Below are positions 1 through 64,000 of a stretch of DNA of 64,000 nucleotides, piece by piece. Below the pieces are notes generated by a model that made no database searches, had not been told where the DNA came from, and was given only the letters and a program-made list of their open reading frames with translations. The translations under genes were made by a program, and so were the position numbers. The stretch spans positions 124,001 through 188,000 of IMG/VR virus record IMGVR_UViG_3300018004_000004. The stretch is one strand, 5' to 3'. Positions within the stretch are counted from its first letter, which is position 1; the number at the start of each line of letters is the position of its first letter.

Positions 1-483
1 GTCCACCAGGATTGTGTTGCCAACGACCTGTGAAATCGGCTGTGCTGCGATATTGTAACCGGCGAAGGAGAAACCTGTTACTGTAAGAGGAGCCCCATCA
101 ACCAGGTCAGCAGTCGGAGGAAATGCAGTTGTGTAGGTGATAACACCATCAGACAGAACTGCGCTAATGATGGCATTGTTCGGACCAAAACCGGATCCAG
201 AAGTTCCAACCAGAAGAGTGCCCTGAGCAGTACCGACGCGCATCAGGTAAACATTGTCGCAGTATACGGCCGCTTCAGACATCCCGCGGATTAGCGTACC
301 TTGCAGCCCGAAAAGAGTGGTTGCTGTAGCAACGCTTACAACCTGATAAGGGCTGTTTGCGGGTCCAGTCGCGGAGGTACCAAGGACCATGATGGATTGA
401 TTTGTTGGGGTGTTAACGGCGGCCAGACCACCGTCTACGGTCTGTACCTGGACACCCGGCAGATTTGCAAAAGTGAAGGACAT
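1..483 (-). CDS. Contractile tail sheath protein, N-terminal part (runs off window)
   Basis: Not in ORF track. Hand translation from ATG at 483 (RBS GGAGG): MSFTFANLPGVQVQTVDGGLAAVNTPTNQSIMVLGTSATGPANSPYQV...FGLQGTLIRGMSEAA...VYLMRVG, open to position 1. This matches the typical sheath N-terminus (PGV...LGT..GP...FG..G.L). Confidence 0.8.
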   Translation of the reverse strand, partial: MSFTFANLPGVQVQTVDGGLAAVNTPTNQSIMVLGTSATGPANSPYQVVSVATATTLFGLQGTLIRGMSEAAVYCDNVYLMRVGTAQGTLLVGTSGSGFGPNNAIISAVLSDGVITYTTAFPPTADLVDGAPLTVTGFSFAGYNIAAQPISQVVGNTILVD

Positions 484-23439: not shown

Positions 23440-26244
23440 TTACTCGTAGACCACAAGAACGTTGCAGTTGGCTGTTGTGATTGCCAGCTCCAAGCCTGTA
23501 TAGAATGGGATCTCTTTCAAGTCCACATAAATAACGCCTGGGTTTGCGCCACCGCCGGTCGGGATAGCCCCTGATGCCCACAAAATCGTTCCTGAAGCCG
23601 CCGTATTATCGTATAACGTAATCGCAGCATTGTTCGTGATGTTGCTGATAACGATAGAGCGTAATGCTCCGGCTCCAATCTTCAAGTTGATACCAGCAGT
23701 TGTACCTGACTGGAAGAAGGAGATAGGAGCTGTTGAATCGCGCCCTTCACGAAGAATGGAAGCATCCCAAACTTCCAAACTTGCTGATGTGCTAGCTGCT
23801 GTACTTGTTGCCCAAGCATTGATTGGGAAGATAGGTATCTGATAGAGAACGCCTGTCGTCGGAGTGACCGAGTGAACGAGCAGGTTGTCTACGAAGAAGT
23901 AGGCGCCTGTCACACTGTACTGAATCTCATACAGATGGACGTTCGTGTCCAGAACGAACTGACTAACTACACCATTGAAGGAGCCAGATGTAACTGTCTG
24001 TATGCTGGTGGCATGTACAGTGTTGATTTGGAGCTGGCCGGAAGCGTTCACAGAAAAGTAACAACCGTTCTGTGGAGCAACAGTGGACAAGGTAACAGCT
24101 CCCCAAGCACGGAGAGTGTTAGCAACTGTGACTGCTGTCAGTCGGACGTTGGCTGCGAAAGCCAGAGGATGCGAGTGGATATAACGCCCGCTACGAACGG
24201 AAGTCAGCTTGCCATATGCACTAGCAGCAGTACCACTAGTAAGTGTAGCAATGGAGTTCGCCACACCAGCAGCAGAACCTGTCCCGCTGTTTGCCACTGT
24301 CCAAAAGTTCGTGTCCACAGAGGCAGCAAAAGGTACACCCACGACCTTGTAAGGCTGGTTGACAGCCAGAGTGTGGGCAACATTAGAAACGACTGGGAAG
24401 CCGTCCTTATCTGCAATACCTATGATTGACGTGCGCAGGTTGCCATTGATATCCAGCGAACGAGGAATAGCCTCGATCATCGGGGCAGCGAATGTTTCCA
24501 GACGGAATGTTGTGGTTGTAACTGCGCCATTGTTGGTGACGCGCACGCGATAACTCTTACCAACTGCCTGAACTGTGAGACCGAAAGACTTGCCCGGGAC
24601 ATAGGTATAAGAGTCTGTTACATCGAAGTGCGTACCATCACCAGACTGATCAATGAAAACCGTGCAGGTCTGGTCAGAGAAGAACATCACCTGGATGGCA
24701 CCGACGCCCAGAGCATTAGTTGTCGTACCAGTGAATGTGGCGCCTGAACCTATGTTAGCAGCAGATGTGTTGTTGGCATCCGCTGTGATATTCTGAATAG
24801 TTGAAACAGCCAAACATACATCGCCATCAGCATCTATATAATGATCGTAAGACGCTCCGTTATCTGCATAGAGCTGAGCAGCTACAACCTTGGAAACTGT
24901 CTGGTCTGCTGGTGTGGTGATCGAAGCTGCGATGGCAGCGAGATTGCCACCTGTCTCTTGTGCAGCATTGGCAGGCAGAGGAAGTGCGGCTGCTGTGATA
25001 GCAACGTTCCCACTATCGTGAACAGGAAGAGGATTGGTGAGGGCTGCTGCAACTGCTGAACCGATAGCTGCTGCTGTTGGAGGAGTTAGGGTTGTAACCT
25101 GAGCAGTTGGAAGCGGATTTGTAGCTGGGTTGCTTACGATTGCCGAAGCAATAGCTGCTGCTGAAGGCGCAGCAACTGCTGCTCCGATTGCAGCCGCAGT
25201 GGGAGGCGTAATAGCACTGATTGTACCAGCACTCAAACTGACTGTGCCGCTAACCACACCGTTGAATGTTGTGGGAGGGTTGGAAACTATAGCAGAAGCG
25301 ATTGCAGCAGCAGACGGCGCAGCAACAGCAGCACCAATGGCTGCTGCTGTCGGAGGAGTAAGAGTTGTGACTTGTGCTGTAGGAAGAGGATTGGTAGCCG
25401 GGTTGGAAACAATGGCTGCTGCAATAGATGCCGCGGTCGGAGGCAGAGTACCAGCGATAGTAGAGAGATAACCTTCTGCGATTGAATCTTGAACTGCGAA
25501 TGTTCCTGCGTTCGTGACTGCGATGGACTGACCAGCAGCCAGTGTGACGTTCGGGAGAGCCAGGACGTTAGCATTGACGCCAATGACCGTCTGTCCGGTA
25601 GGAGCAGAACCCCAAGTAGAAGGAGTACCAAGATTGACGCTATCCCATTGGGTGATGTTGTTCGTGCCGGTAACCGTACCGGTAAATGTGCCCAAGACGC
25701 GAAGGTTGCCGTTTAGATCGGTGGACAGAAGGACTTCATTGCCCTCAGTGTAGAGAGGAGCAAGGTTGGAAGCCTTGGCGGTGAGAGCACCGACGTTGTT
25801 ATTGCTTGGAGCCTGACCGTTGCTGGTAAGAGTTCCTACAACTGTCTGCTGTGCCGAGAAGTTGTCGATAACAACGTGGTTGCCCGTGCTGTTGCCGATC
25901 GTGCTCCACACATCGAACTGTGTGCCGCCAGCGAATGCTGTGACATTGAGACGATAGAAACCCCCTTCGCTACAAGTCGCTGCGAGCATTGGTTGGGAAA
26001 GGGGAGACCACGTATCCACGACTTCCCAATAAGCTTGTGCTCCCAGAACTGGGGTAAACTCGAGGTTGATAACGATGTTCGAGAACGTCCCGACAACATT
26101 GTAGAGCCCAAACACAAAGTTTCCAGGCTCCCCGTGAAAACGGGGAACAGAATCCTTCACAAAGTATTGAGTGCTTGGACCTGTGCCAGTCACCCCTGTG
26201 AGGATGGGAACGATTGTGCCGCGAACTATGTTGAGTACGCTCAT
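23440..26244 (-). CDS. Long tail fibre/spike-like protein with Ala-Pro repeats
   Basis: 934 aa; repeats of PPTAAAIGAAVAAPSAAAIASAIVSNP; beta-rich lectin-like C-terminal region. Confidence 0.6.
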   Translation of the reverse strand: MSVLNIVRGTIVPILTGVTGTGPSTQYFVKDSVPRFHGEPGNFVFGLYNVVGTFSNIVINLEFTPVLGAQAYWEVVDTWSPLSQPMLAATCSEGGFYRLNVTAFAGGTQFDVWSTIGNSTGNHVVIDNFSAQQTVVGTLTSNGQAPSNNNVGALTAKASNLAPLYTEGNEVLLSTDLNGNLRVLGTFTGTVTGTNNITQWDSVNLGTPSTWGSAPTGQTVIGVNANVLALPNVTLAAGQSIAVTNAGTFAVQDSIAEGYLSTIAGTLPPTAASIAAAIVSNPATNPLPTAQVTTLTPPTAAAIGAAVAAPSAAAIASAIVSNPPTTFNGVVSGTVSLSAGTISAITPPTAAAIGAAVAAPSAAAIASAIVSNPATNPLPTAQVTTLTPPTAAAIGSAVAAALTNPLPVHDSGNVAITAAALPLPANAAQETGGNLAAIAASITTPADQTVSKVVAAQLYADNGASYDHYIDADGDVCLAVSTIQNITADANNTSAANIGSGATFTGTTTNALGVGAIQVMFFSDQTCTVFIDQSGDGTHFDVTDSYTYVPGKSFGLTVQAVGKSYRVRVTNNGAVTTTTFRLETFAAPMIEAIPRSLDINGNLRTSIIGIADKDGFPVVSNVAHTLAVNQPYKVVGVPFAASVDTNFWTVANSGTGSAAGVANSIATLTSGTAASAYGKLTSVRSGRYIHSHPLAFAANVRLTAVTVANTLRAWGAVTLSTVAPQNGCYFSVNASGQLQINTVHATSIQTVTSGSFNGVVSQFVLDTNVHLYEIQYSVTGAYFFVDNLLVHSVTPTTGVLYQIPIFPINAWATSTAASTSASLEVWDASILREGRDSTAPISFFQSGTTAGINLKIGAGALRSIVISNITNNAAITLYDNTAASGTILWASGAIPTGGGANPGVIYVDLKEIPFYTGLELAITTANCNVLVVYE

Positions 26245-39947: not shown

Positions 39948-42860
39948 GTGATGAATCAACGTTACCACGTTGTATTCGAAGGAGAGAATAAAGTAACAAC
40001 TCGCCGTCCTTGGAAGGGACGCGGTGTTGAGCTTTATTCCTCCAGCGGTGATCCAGCAAGAGGCATACCAGCGATGTTTGGTTCTCATGAAGTGCGTCAG
40101 TTTCTTGAGAACCTCGGGCCATTCATCGTAGCATCGATGGACAATCCCGCAGTCGCAGCTCAGATCCTTGATGAAGGGTATGTGGTAACAGACCCTGATT
40201 CAGGTGCGAAGAGCAAGTGGTATGTTGGTGGTTATTTCGTCCGCGACGACGGTGCAGTGTATATCATGCTGCCCGAAGTCACAACCGATGCCCAGTTTCG
40301 TTCTAAGCTGGGTTTGCATATTGACCTAAACGATCAGTGGGGCAATAGCTTCAAGGTAGGTAAGTATCTGAAGCGCTTGTTCTCACATCATCGTAAGTTC
40401 ATGCAAGGTGAAGTCGTGAAGGAGCTCGACAATGTCGTGCTCGTACGGCTGAAGAGTGGCAAAGTGATCAGTGTGAAATATGCTGATCATGGCGCGCTCA
40501 CAGATGGCATGAACCTCGTGTCAACACATTGCATGAAGCTCATGGGTCTTAACAAGACCATGGGTGCTGGCCTTAGGATCACGGCGTTGAGTCCTAAGGG
40601 ATTCAGCAAAGGCCATGCGATTGTACTGCCGGAGCTGCAGCATGATGTCGTGCTGTTCAACTCTAAGAAGCTGCTGACAGGTGATCAGTTCACCTTCGGC
40701 ATGGATTGGTTGCATAGCGGTGCAGTATTCACTGATATGCAATCAGTCATTAACTTCAGGTTCGCAAACACCAGCTTCTTGTCGCAGTGGGACAAGGAGT
40801 TTCTGGAGACAGTAGTCGATGCTATTGAAGATGAGGATAAGCTGAAGCGTATGCTTCAGTTCTATCATGTGGAGTTCCACAAACAGCGGGACGATGACGG
40901 AGACATGCAGTTCATTCAGAAGGACAAAGAGTGGGCACTGTTGCGTGCATTGCGCGGTGGTGTGAAGATTCAAGATCACCCAGCGCTTGTGCGTAAGGTG
41001 TTCCATCTATTTGCCGACAAGGTTCGCAACTGCGAAACCAACATTCGTGTGCCTATACCTGAGACAGCAGGTGGTGCACGTTATGCTTTGGTTGATCCTA
41101 CCATCTTCGATATGTGGGGTGATCCCACTCTCGAAGGTACTCTGAAGAATGACCAGGTATATTGCGCTGGCGATGTTGGCAGCGTGGTATTCCACAGGCA
41201 GCCGAATGCGCATCGTGACGAGCATTATATCGCGCGCGCAACAAGCAATGAATATCTGAAAGCTATGGACACTGGATGTTTCATGTTCATATCCAAGGAT
41301 ATCATCAAGCCAAGCCTGGCCAAGCTAGGTGGTGGTGATCAGGATGATCGCCTTGTGTATTACAAGGACCCAGCAGTTGTGGAACACTTCAGGCAACTGG
41401 AGCTGGATCCATATCCCACAGTGCCTCTGGTTGAGAAGCCAGAGCCACCAAAGCGTTCCAATGCATTTGCACACAGACTGCATCGCACACCGATCTATGA
41501 TCGGACTCAGCTGCTGATGATGTTGGATCAGATGAAGAACCAGAGTCTGCATATTGGCTTCGTTGTTAATGCTGGTATGCATGACACTGTGCTGACGGAT
41601 AATAGGGCAGAGATCACCAGGAATCTGGAGGCTCTGCCAAAGACACTGAAGAATCAATCTGCCTATGAATGGTTCACAACCAAGTATCAGAACTATACGC
41701 TGCGTGAACCAATGTCCAGGTTGGAGTTGGTCATTGACGCGGTCAAGAAGACTGGTGCTGATCTGGCTGGTATTCGTGACCAGGTGAAGAAGTTCAATGA
41801 CACATTCGAAGTCGTGGCTGAGTTCATGACGCGCGGCGGTAGGTATGATGGGAGAATCCCATTGTCTCGCCGCGGTGACAGCCATCCAGTTATGGTCCGT
41901 ACCATTGTGGATGATAAGCTGGATGAACTCAAGCGACTGAGGCAAGACCTGGAAGATATCATCACTGATATCTCTTGGCAAATGATACCGCCAGTGGCGG
42001 AGGAAATACTGACATGCCCGTGCTATGAAGAGCAGGCGACTCAGCTGGCGTATGCCATGCGTCAGGAGTATCGCAATCAGTGGGCCAATCTGAGTAAGGA
42101 GATTGAGCGCACTGGTGACAAGGCAGAAGTAAAGAAGACCATAGATGCGTACATGAAGATCGACAAGGCGATGTATGAGCGCTTCGCTCCACATCCGCTG
42201 ATCATCGATGCCATGGTCAAGCTGTATATCATGGTGTATGAATCCAGGAAGCCAGAGGCGCCAAGGGACGAAGATGGTCGTCCTATTAAGTTTGGTGATG
42301 GTATCCTCTGGGGCCCGAGAATGTCCGGCCTGACCCTGCGCATGATGGAGCGCGCAGGGCTGGCTGGGCGGTTCACTGAGATCACATTCGAGGATGAAGT
42401 CAAACACCTCCGTAAGGAGAGCCTCGATGTGGTTATTGATCAGGGTATTGTACGCCAGGAGGGTACCAATATCTTGGTGGGTACCATTGACCCAATGGCC
42501 GATGGTGCTAAGAAGGCAGAGAAAGGATGGGTGAAGGTGGCAGCAAGGGATGCATATCCCTATGAACCAGAACCCAGGTACATGATCCTGCGAGTAGTTA
42601 ATGGCATGCATGCCAAGGGTGCGTCTCCAGTTGAGATCGCACAGTGGCGTGATCATGCTAACGAACAGGTCGAACTAGTTCCTTTCATCTGGACGAACCC
42701 GGAGAATGAAGAAGAACACGCAGTTCGCGTGGTGCTCAATGGCCAGGATTATGGCTATATCGATCGCAAGGACAACACGTATGTCACTGAAAAGACTATG
42801 GGTTGGCTATTGCCGGGCACAACACCAAAGACCATGGGAGTATTGGTCTATGAAAGGTAG
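39948..42860 (+). CDS. Putative single-subunit two-barrel RNA polymerase (YonO/cellular RdRP-like)
   Basis: 970 aa; ordered motifs LTDGMNLVS, LRI...KGFSKG, FHRQPN, LGGGDQDDR, matching the TDG..IS, R...KG, R.P and GG.D.DGD motifs of QDE-1-type RdRP/YonO. Confidence 0.7.
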   Translation: MMNQRYHVVFEGENKVTTRRPWKGRGVELYSSSGDPARGIPAMFGSHEVRQFLENLGPFIVASMDNPAVAAQILDEGYVVTDPDSGAKSKWYVGGYFVRDDGAVYIMLPEVTTDAQFRSKLGLHIDLNDQWGNSFKVGKYLKRLFSHHRKFMQGEVVKELDNVVLVRLKSGKVISVKYADHGALTDGMNLVSTHCMKLMGLNKTMGAGLRITALSPKGFSKGHAIVLPELQHDVVLFNSKKLLTGDQFTFGMDWLHSGAVFTDMQSVINFRFANTSFLSQWDKEFLETVVDAIEDEDKLKRMLQFYHVEFHKQRDDDGDMQFIQKDKEWALLRALRGGVKIQDHPALVRKVFHLFADKVRNCETNIRVPIPETAGGARYALVDPTIFDMWGDPTLEGTLKNDQVYCAGDVGSVVFHRQPNAHRDEHYIARATSNEYLKAMDTGCFMFISKDIIKPSLAKLGGGDQDDRLVYYKDPAVVEHFRQLELDPYPTVPLVEKPEPPKRSNAFAHRLHRTPIYDRTQLLMMLDQMKNQSLHIGFVVNAGMHDTVLTDNRAEITRNLEALPKTLKNQSAYEWFTTKYQNYTLREPMSRLELVIDAVKKTGADLAGIRDQVKKFNDTFEVVAEFMTRGGRYDGRIPLSRRGDSHPVMVRTIVDDKLDELKRLRQDLEDIITDISWQMIPPVAEEILTCPCYEEQATQLAYAMRQEYRNQWANLSKEIERTGDKAEVKKTIDAYMKIDKAMYERFAPHPLIIDAMVKLYIMVYESRKPEAPRDEDGRPIKFGDGILWGPRMSGLTLRMMERAGLAGRFTEITFEDEVKHLRKESLDVVIDQGIVRQEGTNILVGTIDPMADGAKKAEKGWVKVAARDAYPYEPEPRYMILRVVNGMHAKGASPVEIAQWRDHANEQVELVPFIWTNPENEEEHAVRVVLNGQDYGYIDRKDNTYVTEKTMGWLLPGTTPKTMGVLVYER

Positions 42861-49124: not shown

Positions 49125-49261
49125 CACTCGAACAGTTCGAGGGGATCCTTGCTTTGTTCTTTGTCCTGTATTTGCTCTTGCGCGCCAGGCGCAAAGAGTT
49201 AGGACTCAAGGATCACCTAGATCCAATGCCATGGATTAGGAAGCACATCTTCCCGGAGTGA
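49121..49261 (+). CDS. Small membrane peptide (46 aa)
   Basis: GTGA overlap; MTLEQFEGILALFFVLYLLLRARRK... Confidence 0.45.
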   Translation: MTLEQFEGILALFFVLYLLLRARRKELGLKDHLDPMPWIRKHIFPE

Positions 49262-49275
49262 GAAAGGAGGTCATC

Positions 49276-50889
49276 ATGGACAAGAAGGAAATGGCTGATG
49301 AACTGATCTATGCTATATTCCAAACCCTAAAGAATCATGCGATTAACTTCTTGCTTGATGGCCTTGTTCTCAAACCGTTATCCAAATCGATTGCTGCTAA
49401 GATGCAGCCCAGCCCGTATAAGGGAGCGAGCGCATTGTTATCTGCTCGCATGATGTCCAAGAAGACTGTTGATGGTGCCATCCTTGAGGGCCCAACAGAG
49501 GCAGGCTATGCCAAGTATGCTATTCGCAAGGGCATGCCAGGCCCAGGACAGAAGAGATTGGCAATCGAGAATGAACCGCACACCGTTGATGATTTTGATG
49601 GTGTGATTGAGGAAGGCTATGGCAAAGGCAAGAAAGAACTCATCTACACAGGCCAAGCCGCCATCAAAGTTGGAGAAGAAAGATTCCTCGGCAAAGTCAA
49701 CATTCATAAGCACACTGCTGACAAAGCCGGGCTCCACTGGGATTTTGTTGCGGAAGGCGTTAAGCCTGGGACACAGCAGTTCGAAGTTAACATCCCTACT
49801 GGCCGATGCAAAGGACGCTATGCCTTTGTTACCACGGCCAAAGGCATGCTCATTACCCGCCTCAAGGACAGGAGCGTCCTCATCGAGAAGCCGACATTCC
49901 ATCTCAAAGGCGAAGACCTTCTGAGAGAGCTCGACAAGAATCCCAGTGGCACAATAGCAGAGTGGAAACCAGATGGTTCACTCGCGAATGTGGCCATTAG
50001 TGGGCAACGGGCTATCTTTAGAAGTCATCGGGATACAGGCGAACCTTACTACGATAAACTGCCAGGACTAGAAGATCTGAGCAACCGTAGTGGATTCCTA
50101 TCCAATCGCCTGTTCTTCCCGGGACCCAACCTGGATGGAACGGTGTTACGAGGGGAACTGTTCCATCCAGAAGGGGCTGCTCGAGTTGGTGGTATTCTGA
50201 ATAGCATGCCGGACAAGGCTATTCAGTTCCAGACAGAGCATGGCCCAGTGACATTCATTGTATGGGACGAGCTGAAGCACAATGGCAGAGATATATCCAA
50301 GCTGCCTTACGCAGAGAGGAGAGCGATCTATGTCGCGGACGTCAATAGCATTCGACACTTCAACGGGCTTTGGTCGTACGTGCCAGCTCGTACCCGAGCT
50401 TTCCTTTCGTTTTACAGGGATATCGTCAACGATCCTCGTGGCCTGCCCTACGCCGAAGGTATTGTCCTCAAGGATGGAAGTAGCCCAGCTGGTGAACCAT
50501 GGCGCAAGGTCAAGTTCCGCGACACCGTGGATGTCAAGATTGTTGATGTTCTTGAGGGAACTGGTAAGTACGAAGGATCGGCCGGCAAGCTTCTGGTTCA
50601 GACAGCAGGAGGAGGACGCGGAGAAGTTGGTTCTTTCGCCATGCCTGATTGGCAGCGAAAGCAGATCCTGATTGATAAGGATCTGGTCAAGGGGCAGGTG
50701 ATTGAGATCTATGCCCAAGAGATAACCAAGGCTGGTGCTCCGCGCGCTGGTGTCATGCTGCGATTCCATCCAAGCAAGAGCGAGTATGCATTCGATCTCG
50801 AATCGAAAGCTATTGCTGATGTGGATGGCAGGACACCAAATGAAGTGAAGTATGCAATGAAGACAGCCGCAGGCTGGAGGAAGAAATGA
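49276..50889 (+). CDS. lig: ATP-dependent DNA ligase with N-terminal rearranged LigD-type phosphoesterase domain
   Basis: Motif I EWKPDG, III LRGELF, IIIa FIVWD, IV EGIVLK, V WRKVK, then OB domain; upstream PE motifs KRLAIENEPH...FDG.I..GYG.G and KH...GLHWDF. Confidence 0.85.
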   Translation: MDKKEMADELIYAIFQTLKNHAINFLLDGLVLKPLSKSIAAKMQPSPYKGASALLSARMMSKKTVDGAILEGPTEAGYAKYAIRKGMPGPGQKRLAIENEPHTVDDFDGVIEEGYGKGKKELIYTGQAAIKVGEERFLGKVNIHKHTADKAGLHWDFVAEGVKPGTQQFEVNIPTGRCKGRYAFVTTAKGMLITRLKDRSVLIEKPTFHLKGEDLLRELDKNPSGTIAEWKPDGSLANVAISGQRAIFRSHRDTGEPYYDKLPGLEDLSNRSGFLSNRLFFPGPNLDGTVLRGELFHPEGAARVGGILNSMPDKAIQFQTEHGPVTFIVWDELKHNGRDISKLPYAERRAIYVADVNSIRHFNGLWSYVPARTRAFLSFYRDIVNDPRGLPYAEGIVLKDGSSPAGEPWRKVKFRDTVDVKIVDVLEGTGKYEGSAGKLLVQTAGGGRGEVGSFAMPDWQRKQILIDKDLVKGQVIEIYAQEITKAGAPRAGVMLRFHPSKSEYAFDLESKAIADVDGRTPNEVKYAMKTAAGWRKK

Positions 50890-63543: not shown

Positions 63544-63820
63544 GTACGAAGTTCGGCTGTACTACAAAGGCAGGGCGGACTGGGACACAGAGTTCTTTGA
63601 CGCTACCAGCCACACTGGAGCACGAAATGAAGCTGCCAAGATTGCGAAGCAGCATCATGCTGATCATCACTGCGTAGGTCAGCCGACGCCTCAGGATGAG
63701 TACAAGCATTCTGGTCCTCTCTCGAAGACCAAGATCTCTGCCCTTGGGACGAACCCCAAGGAGCAAGTGGCTGCTGTTGAAACCATGTTTGGCATCAACA
63801 GCAAGAAGAAGAAAGAATGA
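63536..63820 (+). CDS. Hypothetical protein
   Basis: MAKYEVRLYY...; GAGGA RBS. Confidence 0.55.
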   Translation: MAKYEVRLYYKGRADWDTEFFDATSHTGARNEAAKIAKQHHADHHCVGQPTPQDEYKHSGPLSKTKISALGTNPKEQVAAVETMFGINSKKKKE

Positions 63821-64000
63821 CCGACGAACTTGTCAGCAATCAGTTTATACCTTGGCCTCTTGTCAGCAATCAGTTTATACCTTGGCCTCTTGGAAAAGAG
63901 AAGCCAAAGAGAAAGTGCAAGATTATCGTTAATATAGGTCTGCCTGGCTGCGGGAAGACTACGGAAACCCGTGAGCTCATGAAGACCGACGGTAATCTGA
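63817..64000 (+). CDS. P-loop kinase, polynucleotide kinase (PNK/AAA_33)-like, N-terminus only
   Basis: Not in ORF track. ATGA overlap; ...KIIVNIGLPGCGKTTETRELMK.. Walker A at the N-terminus. Confidence 0.65.
   Translation, partial: MTDELVSNQFIPWPLVSNQFIPWPLGKEKPKRKCKIIVNIGLPGCGKTTETRELMKTDGNL
63830..63892 (+). repeat. Perfect 30-bp tandem duplication
   Basis: TTGTCAGCAATCAGTTTATACCTTGGCCTC twice (+TTG), encoding LVSNQFIPWP twice in frame. Confidence 0.9.

What the first reader, a model, noticed from the sequence alone, without database searches (positions are those of the whole stretch)
49276..50889. DNA ligase fused to a circularly permuted LigD phosphoesterase domain
Established: the LigD 3'-phosphoesterase (PE) domain runs in the order QKH...LHYDFRLE, then SWAVPKG...KRLAV.VEDH...FEG.I..G.YG.G. 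Seen here, the halves are swapped: YAIRKG...KRLAIENEPH...FDGVIEEGYGKG (from ~49516) comes first and IHKHTADKAGLHWDF (~49702-49746) comes after it, followed by a complete ATP ligase (EWKPDG). The metal ligands His, His, Asp and the E.H pair are retained, while the LHxDFR arginine and the downstream tyrosine appear substituted. Inference: a natural circular permutation giving a one-polypeptide end-healing and sealing enzyme, possibly to repair breaks made by host defence nucleases.
Basis: partly seen in the sequence, partly recalled or inferred. Interest (0 to 1): 0.75.

Follow-up and report, generated by a model that had tools for sequence, protein, structure and literature searches.

The report
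Phage ligase with rewired end-healing domain

Summary
The gene (ATG 49276 to stop 50889, + strand) encodes an N-terminal LigD-type 3'-phosphoesterase (PE) barrel fused to a complete ATP-dependent DNA ligase. In it, the PE motif block "YAIRKG..KRLAIENEPH..FDGVIEEGYGKG" comes before the metal-binding block "NIHKHTADKAGLHWDF".

Homology to PE is solid:
- Profile-profile probability is 97.5% (E 7e-12).
- 95 canonical PE proteins were recovered from 1.84 billion. In all 95 the two blocks lie in the opposite order.
- The five best structural matches of the AlphaFold model are all solved PE domains (Z 7.2-8.7; the next, unrelated, match has Z 4.2).

It is not a circular permutation. The C-terminal strands stay last, so the order is b3-b4-b5-[b1'-b2']-b6-b7-b8. 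The metal-binding hairpin was moved into the b5-b6 connection.

On a ligase-domain tree the rearranged proteins form one split (100/97). Their sister, P0222, is a full-length homologue with the canonical order, so the change looks derived and single.

The family lost the essential Arg and Tyr of PE. It keeps four His and one Asp in 130 of 130 members, and a Lys replaces the Ser that partners the Arg. Catalytic activity and biological role are inferred, not shown.

Verdict: a new variant of a known kind, of moderate interest.

The parts
49264..49270 (+). Shine-Dalgarno site AAGGAGG, 5 nt upstream of the ATG
   Evidence: Read directly. The upstream ORF stops at TGA 49259-49261.
49276..50889 (+). 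Whole gene: rewired PE domain + ATP-dependent DNA ligase (537 aa from the ATG, stop included)
   Evidence: ORF. Homologues of about 533 aa start at this Met. AlphaFold model mean pLDDT 85.6.
49276..49497 (+). N-terminal region (residues 7-80): long helix 9-49, low-confidence loop, helix 57-66, short strand 74-77. No detectable remnant of the ancestral hairpin.
   Evidence: pLDDT 40-77 here. No second HxH..HxD motif in 144 members. R64 and D72 nearly invariant.
49498..49680 (+). PE block B (residues 81-141), equivalent to canonical b3-b4-b5. Contains K86 (in place of Ser61), K91, KRLA, E104-N105-x-P107-H108 (His84 equivalent), the VDDF segment with the Tyr88 deletion, and GxIxEGYGKG.
   Evidence: Pfam LigD_N profile positions 22-77; hmmsearch and hhalign; 3p4h sequence match.
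49681..49767 (+). Relocated metal-binding hairpin A (residues 142-170), equivalent to canonical b1-b2. Contains N148, H150, H152 (His42), H160 (His48), D162 (Asp50), V164 (in place of Arg52) and E166.
   Evidence: Rearrangement tests. 95 of 95 canonical proteins match this piece upstream of B. 12 of 18 residues identical to residues 59-76 of the canonical-order homologue P0222. Model strands 141-154 and 158-165, pLDDT above 90.
49768..49872 (+). PE block C (residues 171-205), equivalent to canonical b6-b7-b8 (FEVNIP.G..KGRYAF...L..R.KD)
   Evidence: Collinear with canonical PE in hhalign, in VIA-align up to CkoPE residue 117 and in 5dmp positions 104-139.
49873..49932 (+). Linker (residues 206-225), including the conserved K211-P212
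49933..50487 (+). Ligase nucleotidyltransferase domain (residues 226-410). Motif I is EWKPDG with K237. E300, E400-G401 and K405 are conserved.
   Evidence: PHROG 114 E 1.8e-23; Pfam PF01068 sub-threshold; Foldseek matches to DNA ligases at E 3e-14; K237 in 130 of 130.
50488..50772 (+). Ligase OB domain (residues 411-505), with motif V lysines K417 and K419
   Evidence: PF14743 30.3 bits, above its cut-off of 28. It is the only such match in the 215-kb genome.
50773..50886 (+). C-terminal two-helix tail ending in the conserved K535..G539-W540-R-K-K; function unknown
   Evidence: Helices 510-523 and 527-537. Conserved in about 119 of 130 members and present in the canonical-order sister P0222.

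Best explanation
The gene encodes the jumbo phage's DNA ligase, joined at its N-terminus to a LigD-type 3'-phosphoesterase barrel with altered chain topology. The beta-hairpin that carries the metal ligands (canonical b1-b2, motif HxH..HxD) no longer opens the domain. It sits between canonical b5 and b6, giving the order b3-b4-b5-b1'-b2'-b6-b7-b8.

Shown:
- Homology to PE.
- The changed order of the blocks.
- A PE-like barrel in the model.
- One split for the rearranged proteins on a ligase-domain tree, next to homologues with the canonical order.
- Strict conservation of H108, H150, H152, H160 and D162.

Inferred:
- The relocated hairpin fills the same two barrel positions as b1-b2. It follows b5 by a 2-residue turn, and in PaePE strands b1, b2 and b5 form one face. 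This would rebuild a metal site beside H108.
- Lys86, at the position of the Ser that hydrogen-bonds the lost Arg, takes over phosphate contact.
- The domain removes 3'-phosphate or other 3' blocking groups from DNA ends, so that the attached ligase can seal them during phage replication or repair.
For: Homology:
- hhalign of the native domain against 32 canonical PEs gives probability 97.5%, E 7e-12. With the hairpin moved to the front it gives 98.4%, E 5e-15.
- A whole-library profile search gives 331 hits. 95 are Pfam-type canonical PEs, reached at E 5e-10 to 1e-5.

Order:
- In 95 of 95 canonical proteins the A match precedes the B match. Solved PEs 3n9b and 3p43 show the same.

Fold:
- In the AlphaFold models, residues 80-205 have pLDDT above 90.
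- The five best VIA-align matches are all PE structures: 3p4h Z 8.7 with rmsd 1.9 A over 90 residues, 3p43 Z 8.6, 3n9b 7.4, 5dmp 7.2, 3n9d 7.2. The next match has Z 4.2.
- The best Foldseek match is 3p4h.

Origin:
- P0222 aligns over 524 positions (27% identity, E 3e-31), including the C-terminal tail. Its hairpin lies upstream and is 12 of 18 identical to this one.
- On the ligase-domain tree the family is one split (100/97), P0222 is its sister (99/89), and canonical-order P0193 and P0167 come next (100/99).

Constraint:
- H108, H150, H152, H160 and D162 are present in 130 of 130 members, like the ligase Lys237. K86 is present in 129 of 130.
- PE segments have 0.62-0.69 mean pairwise identity, against 0.66 for the nucleotidyltransferase domain.

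Geometry argument:
- Strand lists.
- PaePE strands b1, b2 and b5 form one face (PMC3300020).
- In CkoPE, Arg19 hydrogen-bonds Ser28 and Gln7 across three strands (PMC3082917).
Against: - Two of the six residues essential in Pseudomonas PE are missing. Arg52 is Val164, and Tyr88 lies in a 2-residue deletion (essentiality from PMC8656161 and PMC3300020). The domain could therefore be inactive or have a different chemistry.
- I could not obtain model coordinates, so the overlay of the relocated hairpin on b1-b2 is argued, not measured.
- Pfam LigD_N does not reach its gathering score (22.5 against 31.1 bits).
- The phage already has a T4-type polynucleotide kinase/3'-phosphatase, so a second 3'-phosphatase is not obviously needed.
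- There are no expression or biochemical data.
Confidence: 0.7

Rival explanations
1. True circular permutation of the whole PE domain: the old termini were joined and new ones opened, so the barrel is the same with a rotated chain.
For: The two catalytic blocks are in swapped order. Placing A directly before B (order C-A-B) also raises the profile score to 24.0 bits.
Against: - The block equivalent to b6-b8 follows the hairpin instead of preceding it.
- The native domain aligns B and C collinearly with canonical PE, with A looped out.
- The structural alignment runs collinearly to the last residue of CkoPE.
- The order A-B-C scores best (27.3 bits), above B-C-A (21.3) and C-A-B (24.0).
Confidence: 0.05
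2. The PE-like domain is a catalytically dead relic. It is kept as a DNA-end-binding or structural module of the ligase, and the conserved His and Asp bind a structural metal only.
For: - The family lacks the Arg52 and Tyr88 equivalents, and alanine changes at these positions inactivate PaePE (PMC8656161).
- Many phage ligases carry non-catalytic N-terminal DNA-binding domains (the ASFV and Pmar-Lig ligase structures are among the matches; that their N-terminal domains bind DNA without catalysis is my own knowledge).
- The phage has a separate Pnkp.
Against: - All four His and the Asp are invariant in 130 of 130 members, the same as the ligase's catalytic Lys.
- A Lys appears in 129 of 130 at the position next to the lost Arg. 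This looks like compensation rather than decay.
- The domain is as conserved as the nucleotidyltransferase domain.
Confidence: 0.2
3. The HxH..HxD piece is an unrelated insertion that resembles b1-b2 only by convergence or chance, and the barrel simply lacks its original hairpin.
For: The piece is short (about 25 residues). Individual matches to canonical PEs are weak (median 12.4 bits).
Against: - It maps to the same canonical segment in 95 of 95 independent proteins.
- It is 12 of 18 identical to the upstream hairpin of the full-length homologue P0222, including the unusual H-x7-H spacing and the inward-facing aromatic residues.
- Shuffled or reversed versions add nothing to the profile score.
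- Without it the model barrel would have two empty strand positions.
Confidence: 0.04

Closest known systems
LigD 3'-phosphoesterase domain (Pfam PF13298; solved for Pseudomonas aeruginosa 3N9B/3N9D/2LJ6, Candidatus Korarchaeum 3P4H, Methanosarcina barkeri 3P43, Methanocella 5DMP)
   Same: - Barrel fold in the model.
- His/His/Asp ligands and the His84 equivalent.
- The motifs KRLA, FxGxIxxGxYGxG and KGxWxL-like.
- N-terminal fusion to an ATP-dependent ligase, as in Pseudomonas-type LigD.
   Different: - The metal-binding hairpin lies after b5 instead of at the start.
- Arg52 is Val and Ser61 is Lys.
- Tyr88 is deleted and Gln40 is His.
- The hairpin has H-x7-H spacing instead of H-x5-H.
- There is no POL domain, and no Ku in the genome.
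- The Pfam and NCBIfam cut-offs are not reached.
Unnamed metagenomic PE-ligase fusions with canonical order (P0222, P0193, P0167, P0201, P0221, P0180 and about 35 more representatives)
   Same: - The same ligase type (OB_2).
- The same 'phage-type' PE signature (HxHxAxxAGxHxD, EGYGKG).
- P0222 also shares the C-terminal AGW.RK tail and is the sister on the tree.
   Different: They keep the hairpin upstream and retain the Arg, Ser and Tyr. None is named or studied. None has a full-length relative among cultured phages.
Phage ATP-dependent DNA ligases of PHROG 114 and minimal Lig E-type ligases (6GDR, 4D05), Pmar-Lig (6RAR), Rhizobium phage ligase (9FZX)
   Same: Nucleotidyltransferase + OB_2 core with motifs I-V.
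   Different: The PHROG 114 profile matches only the ligase part. No PE domain is reported for those structures.
T4 polynucleotide kinase/3'-phosphatase acting with a ligase (end healing and sealing)
   Same: The same logic of cleaning a 3' end before sealing. A T4-type Pnkp is encoded about 13 kb downstream.
   Different: Pnkp uses a HAD-type phosphatase and a P-loop kinase, and it is a separate protein. Here the healing module is a PE barrel in the same chain as the ligase.
Hairpin-level permutations between related beta-barrels, e.g. swapped-hairpin versus double-psi barrels (from my own knowledge, not checked here)
   Same: Related barrels differ by the chain position of a beta-hairpin rather than by a rotation of the chain.
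   Different: A different fold and function. No such variant is described for PE in the papers searched.

Membership tests
LigD 3'-phosphoesterase (PE) superfamily | Significant sequence homology to PE profiles | tested here: met
   hhalign probability 97.5%, E 7e-12. The family profile reaches 95 canonical PEs in 1.84 billion proteins at E 5e-10 to 1e-5. PDB profile hit 3p4h at E 1.9e-5.
LigD 3'-phosphoesterase (PE) superfamily | Pfam PF13298 / NCBIfam TIGR02777 curated score cut-off | tested here: not met
   22.5 bits against a cut-off of 31.1; 16.2 against 144. Only profile positions 22-77 align, because the order is broken.
LigD 3'-phosphoesterase (PE) superfamily | Eight-stranded antiparallel beta-barrel of the PE type | tested here: met
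   Predicted model only. The five best VIA-align matches are all PE structures (Z 7.2-8.7, rmsd 1.9-3.0 A), and the next match has Z 4.2. The best Foldseek hit is 3p4h.
LigD 3'-phosphoesterase (PE) superfamily | Collinear strand order b1 to b8 | tested here: not met
   The order is b3-b4-b5-b1'-b2'-b6-b7-b8.
LigD 3'-phosphoesterase (PE) superfamily | Manganese ligands His42, His48, Asp50 | tested here: met
   H152, H160 and D162 are present in 130 of 130 members. They are aligned to the canonical ligands. Their convergence in space was not measured.
LigD 3'-phosphoesterase (PE) superfamily | Phosphate-binding Arg52, His84, Tyr88 | tested here: not met
   The His84 equivalent H108 is invariant. 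Arg52 is Val164 (122 of 130, never Arg). Tyr88 lies in a 2-residue deletion.
LigD 3'-phosphoesterase (PE) superfamily | [quoted passage not shown] | not testable with these tools
   Needs purified protein.
ATP-dependent DNA ligase (nucleotidyltransferase + OB) | Motif I KxDG lysine and motifs III, IV, V | tested here: met
   EWKPDG with K237, plus E300, E400-G401-K405 and K417/K419, all invariant or nearly so.
ATP-dependent DNA ligase (nucleotidyltransferase + OB) | Family profile and fold matches | tested here: met
   PF14743 30.3 bits, above its cut-off of 28. PF01068 is sub-threshold at 17.7. PHROG 114 E 1.8e-23. Foldseek matches to many DNA ligases at E about 1e-14.
Bacterial NHEJ ligase LigD | Ku partner and POL domain; LigD equivalog scores | tested here: not met
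   No Ku match in the 215-kb genome. There is no POL domain in the protein. NCBIfam LigD models score far below their cut-offs.
Circularly permuted domain | Segment order is a cyclic rotation of the parent order | tested here: not met
   The parent is A-B-C and this protein is B-A-C, which is not a rotation.

The most novel reading that the evidence does not exclude
The hairpin relocation came together with a rebuilt active site: Lys86 for Arg52, an Asp-Asp pair where Tyr88 was, and an extra His. This could give a PE with a new end-healing specificity, for instance for 3' blocking groups left by host defence nucleases or by damage. It would be hard-wired to the only DNA ligase of a lineage of large phages and related elements of Acidobacteriota. 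It would also be a natural example of a non-cyclic, hairpin-level permutation that preserves an enzyme's active site.
Probability: 0.25. Interest if true: 0.6.

Novelty: new variant of a known kind. Interest (0 to 1): 0.45.

Why it matters
For protein evolution, it is a clean case with a dated outgroup (a canonical-order sister) in which a catalytic beta-hairpin changed its place in the chain while the barrel and the metal ligands were kept. Such non-cyclic permutations are rarely documented for enzymes, and profile libraries miss them: Pfam falls below its cut-off here.

For DNA-repair enzymology, the family tests which PE residues are truly indispensable. It lacks the Arg and Tyr that are essential in Pseudomonas PE, yet it conserves everything else as strictly as the ligase's catalytic lysine.

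For phage biology, it adds a healing-plus-sealing DNA ligase to a genome that also carries Pnkp and three RNA-ligase-family genes. That points to heavy investment in nucleic-acid end repair.

Tried and rejected
1. Stand-alone copies of the rewired domain. Short representatives exist (P0122, 232 aa), but P0122 is a frameshifted ligase gene: the ligase continues in another frame. The others look like fragments. I claim no stand-alone form.
2. Intermediates with two hairpins (A-B-A-C). None was found; 144 members have exactly one HxH..HxD motif and 3 fragments have none. hhalign found no remnant of an ancestral hairpin in residues 1-68.
3. Direct 3D overlay of the hairpin on b1-b2. This was not possible. 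The tools give no coordinates and the aligners are sequential.
4. The original PaePE structure paper (PMC2919965) is not held. Strand neighbourhood was taken from PMC3300020 and PMC3082917 instead.
5. Cultured-phage relatives. tblastn of the query, P0222 and P0201 against 50,697 phage records found only ligase-core matches or nothing. The BFVD and AlphaFold-cluster fold searches gave no strong match.
6. Literature. No paper in the library describes a permuted PE.
7. Protein-atlas look-alikes. 65 of 100 hits were LigD_N clusters, but scores were at most 0.76, so this is only a lead.
9. Locus L051 (genome G028, unpublished) was left out of the canonical PE set.
Full report
**Setting.** The window is bases 124001-188000 of a 215,395-base virus record that CheckV estimates as complete. 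A terminase, a portal and a major head protein lie on the minus strand at 10-23 kb of the window. This is therefore a jumbo tailed phage. The finding lies in a run of small plus-strand genes, most without PHROG matches.

**The gene.** One intact ORF ends at the stop 50887-50889.
- The mechanical ORF list starts it at GTG 49258. However, the upstream ORF stops at 49259-49261, an AAGGAGG site lies at 49264-49270, and the ATG at 49276 is where homologues begin.
- Residue numbers below are those of the 543-codon frame given to the tools. Subtract 6 for numbering from the ATG.

**Observation check.** The quoted motifs are at the quoted positions.
- Pfam finds DNA_ligase_OB_2 above its cut-off, DNA_ligase_A_M below it, and LigD_N below it. 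The LigD_N match covers only profile positions 22-77, at residues 86-137.
- PHROG 114 (ATP-dependent DNA ligase) matches residues 233-509.
- The only non-ligase PDB sequence hit is the archaeal PE 3P4H, again for residues 86-136.
- The protein belongs to a full-length family of about 533 aa with 350 hits in the 90%-clustered collection, all metagenomic and unnamed.

**Is the second block really the PE metal hairpin?** I built a canonical PE profile from 32 LigD_N loci of Acidobacteriota genomes (the unpublished locus L051 was left out). I then cut the domain into N (1-80), B (81-141), A (142-170) and C (171-225).
- Mean best-domain score over 47 family members: native order B-A-C 18.4 bits; A-B-C 27.3; B-C-A 21.3; C-A-B 24.0.
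- With A deleted the A-B-C construct scores 22.1; with A reversed 22.4; with A shuffled 21.5 +/- 0.1.
- Profile-profile comparison gives probability 97.5% (E 7e-12) for the native domain and 98.4% (E 5e-15) for the A-B-C order.
- In the native alignment B and C are collinear with canonical PE. A is looped out as an insertion between the long strand ending B and the first strand of C.

**Reverse test.** A profile of the family's N-terminal domain was scored against 1.84 billion representatives and gave 331 hits at E <= 0.001.
- After the family itself come proteins of 105-1394 aa that are matched in two or three stretches.
- Re-scored locally, all 95 such proteins have the A stretch (profile positions about 140-160) N-terminal to the B stretch (about 75-140), with a median gap of 9 residues. 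28 also have a C stretch after B.
- Eight of them were checked, and all carry Pfam LigD_N above its cut-off in the normal collinear order.
- The solved PEs 3N9B and 3P43 show the same A-then-B-then-C order.
- The swapped order in this family is therefore real, specific and far beyond chance.

**Structure.** AlphaFold2 with the family alignment gives mean pLDDT 85.6 for the whole protein and above 90 for residues 80-205.
- Strands: 84-89, 99-108, 115-117, 124-138, 141-154, 158-165, 174-179, 186-193, 196-201.
- In the VIA-align second look at Foldseek's candidates, the five best matches of the N-domain model are all PE structures, with the next, unrelated, match at Z 4.2:

| PDB entry | Z | Detail |
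|---|---|---|
| 3P4H | 8.7 | rmsd 1.9 A over 90 residues; model 81..202 on chain 23..117 |
| 3P43 | 8.6 | |
| 3N9B | 7.4 | |
| 5DMP | 7.2 | |
| 3N9D | 7.2 | |

- The alignment to 3P4H covers almost all of CkoPE except its first 22 residues, which are its b1-b2 hairpin with His9, His15, Asp17 and Arg19 (PMC3082917). About 32 model residues, the size of block A, stay unaligned.
- The whole-protein model matches many DNA ligases.

**Topology.** Using PaePE strand numbering (b1 35-42, b2 48-55, b3 58-63, b4 76-84, b5 105-115, b6 127-134, b7 138-145, b8 155-159; PMC3300020), the chain order here is b3-b4-b5-b1'-b2'-b6-b7-b8.
- This is not a cyclic rotation, so the term circular permutation does not apply. 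One hairpin has changed its place.
- In the model, b5 (124-138) is joined to the first hairpin strand (141-154) by a 2-residue turn, so these two strands must pair.
- In PaePE, b1, b2 and b5 form one face of the barrel (PMC3300020), and b2 is joined to b3 by a tight turn.
- All of b3-b8 superpose on CkoPE, so the only free barrel positions are those of b1 and b2. The strand directions work out: b5 down, b1' up, b2' down, b3 up.
- I therefore infer that the relocated hairpin fills the canonical positions.

**Active site.** The mapping onto PaePE and the conservation in 130 full-length members are:

| PaePE residue | This family | Conservation (of 130) |
|---|---|---|
| His42 | H152 | 130 |
| His48 | H160 | 130 |
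| Asp50 | D162 | 130 |
| His84 | H108 | 130 |
| Gln40 | H150 | 130 |
| Arg52 | V164 | 122; never Arg |
| Ser61 | K86 | 129 |
| Tyr88 | removed by a 2-residue deletion | D111 (117) and D112 (120) conserved next to the gap |

- In CkoPE the Arg hydrogen-bonds the Ser and the Gln across three strands (PMC3082917). The joint change Arg to Val with Ser to Lys looks like a transfer of the positive charge to the neighbouring strand. That fits the hairpin lying next to b3 as in the canonical fold. This is inference.
- PE segments are as conserved as the nucleotidyltransferase domain (0.62-0.69 against 0.66 mean pairwise identity).
- The ligase motifs are intact (K237, E300, K405, K417 and K419 invariant or nearly so).

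**Origin.** Many of the canonical-order PE proteins closest to this domain are themselves fused to the same type of ligase.
- P0222 (605 aa) aligns with the query over 524 positions (27% identity, E 3e-31), down to the C-terminal AGW.RK tail. Its hairpin lies upstream, at residues 59-76, and is 12 of 18 identical to the query's hairpin. It keeps the Arg, Ser and Tyr.
- On a maximum-likelihood tree of the ligase core (48 rows, all rows kept), the 12 rearranged proteins form one split (100/97). P0222 is their sister (99/89), and the canonical-order P0193 and P0167 come next (100/99).
- The root is a midpoint root only. However, every remote PE is canonical, so the relocation is most simply a single derived event inside a lineage of PE-ligase fusions.
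- How it happened is open. One route is duplication of the hairpin into the b5-b6 connection with loss of the original. Another is tandem duplication with two deletions. No intermediate with two hairpins was found.

**Distribution.** Relatives lie on viral contigs of 95-205 kb and on other contigs of 210-219 kb.
- Relatives at about 50% identity also occur in Terriglobia/Acidobacteriota MAGs, several per MAG. They sit among integrase/transposase genes or strings of small genes and inside syntenic blocks of more than 8 kb that recur within and between MAGs.
- The host is thus probably an acidobacterium (inference).
- No full-length relative exists among 50,697 cultured phage records. The PHROG 114 profile covers only the ligase part, even for canonical-order fusions.
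- BFVD and the AlphaFold cluster library hold no strong structural match.

**Function.** The genome has no NAD-dependent ligase and no other OB_2-type ligase, so this is most likely the replicative and repair DNA ligase.
- There is no Ku, so it is not an NHEJ LigD.
- The genome also has a T4-type polynucleotide kinase/3'-phosphatase starting at window 63817, two Rnl2-family ORFs and one Rnl1-family ORF further on. This is a rich end-repair set.
- The most likely mechanism is that the PE barrel binds a 3' end and removes a 3'-phosphate or a 3' blocking nucleoside or group with a His/His/Asp-bound metal, and the ligase then seals the nick. This rests on homology and conservation only.
- The missing Arg and Tyr make an altered specificity or an inactive binding module real alternatives.

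**Verdict.** What is new is the hairpin-relocated, Arg- and Tyr-less PE variant, a monophyletic family of phage and mobile-element ligases. I found no description of it in the literature library.

Noticed in passing
window 63817-64000 (+), continuing past the window end to G000:188797 (L085:1393-2373): A 326-aa T4-type polynucleotide 5'-kinase/3'-phosphatase: AAA_33 plus HAD_PNKP domains, PHROG 505 at E 2.8e-65. It lies about 13 kb downstream of the ligase.
   Followed up: yes
outside the window: G000:194727-195302, G000:198893-199528, G000:214331-214735 (L088, L090, L089): Two Rnl2-family (PF09414) ORFs and one T4 Rnl1-family (PF09511) RNA-ligase ORF in the same phage. With Pnkp they make a complete RNA end-repair set.
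   Followed up: partly
L007-L028 (Terriglobia/Acidobacteriota MAG contigs): Relatives of the gene occur several times per MAG (for example at least five loci in one MAG). They lie inside syntenic blocks of more than 8 kb at 70-93% nucleotide identity, next to rve_3 integrases, a Gp3-like gene and an AEP-TOTE primase. This looks like a family of large prophages or mobile elements, or phage contigs binned with the MAGs.
   Followed up: partly
window 50773-50886 (residues 506-543): The conserved C-terminal two-helix tail ends in K..GW(R/K)(R/K)K. It is shared with the canonical-order sister P0222 but not with other PE-ligase fusions. Its function is unknown; it could be a partner- or DNA-binding tail.
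   Followed up: no
proteins P0183, P0175, P0231 (metagenomic): Canonical PE domains occur in unusual company: a PE-ligase interrupted by a HINT/intein module (P0183), a NUDIX-PE fusion (P0175) and a SNF2-helicase-PE fusion of 1394 aa (P0231).
   Followed up: no
window 39948-42860 (+) and 23440-26244 (-): Two very large ORFs (970 and 934 aa) have no PHROG match at E <= 0.001.
   Followed up: no
L083 (contig of P0122): This copy of the family gene carries a frameshift just after motif I: the ligase continues in another frame. It is either a pseudogene or a sequencing error.
   Followed up: yes
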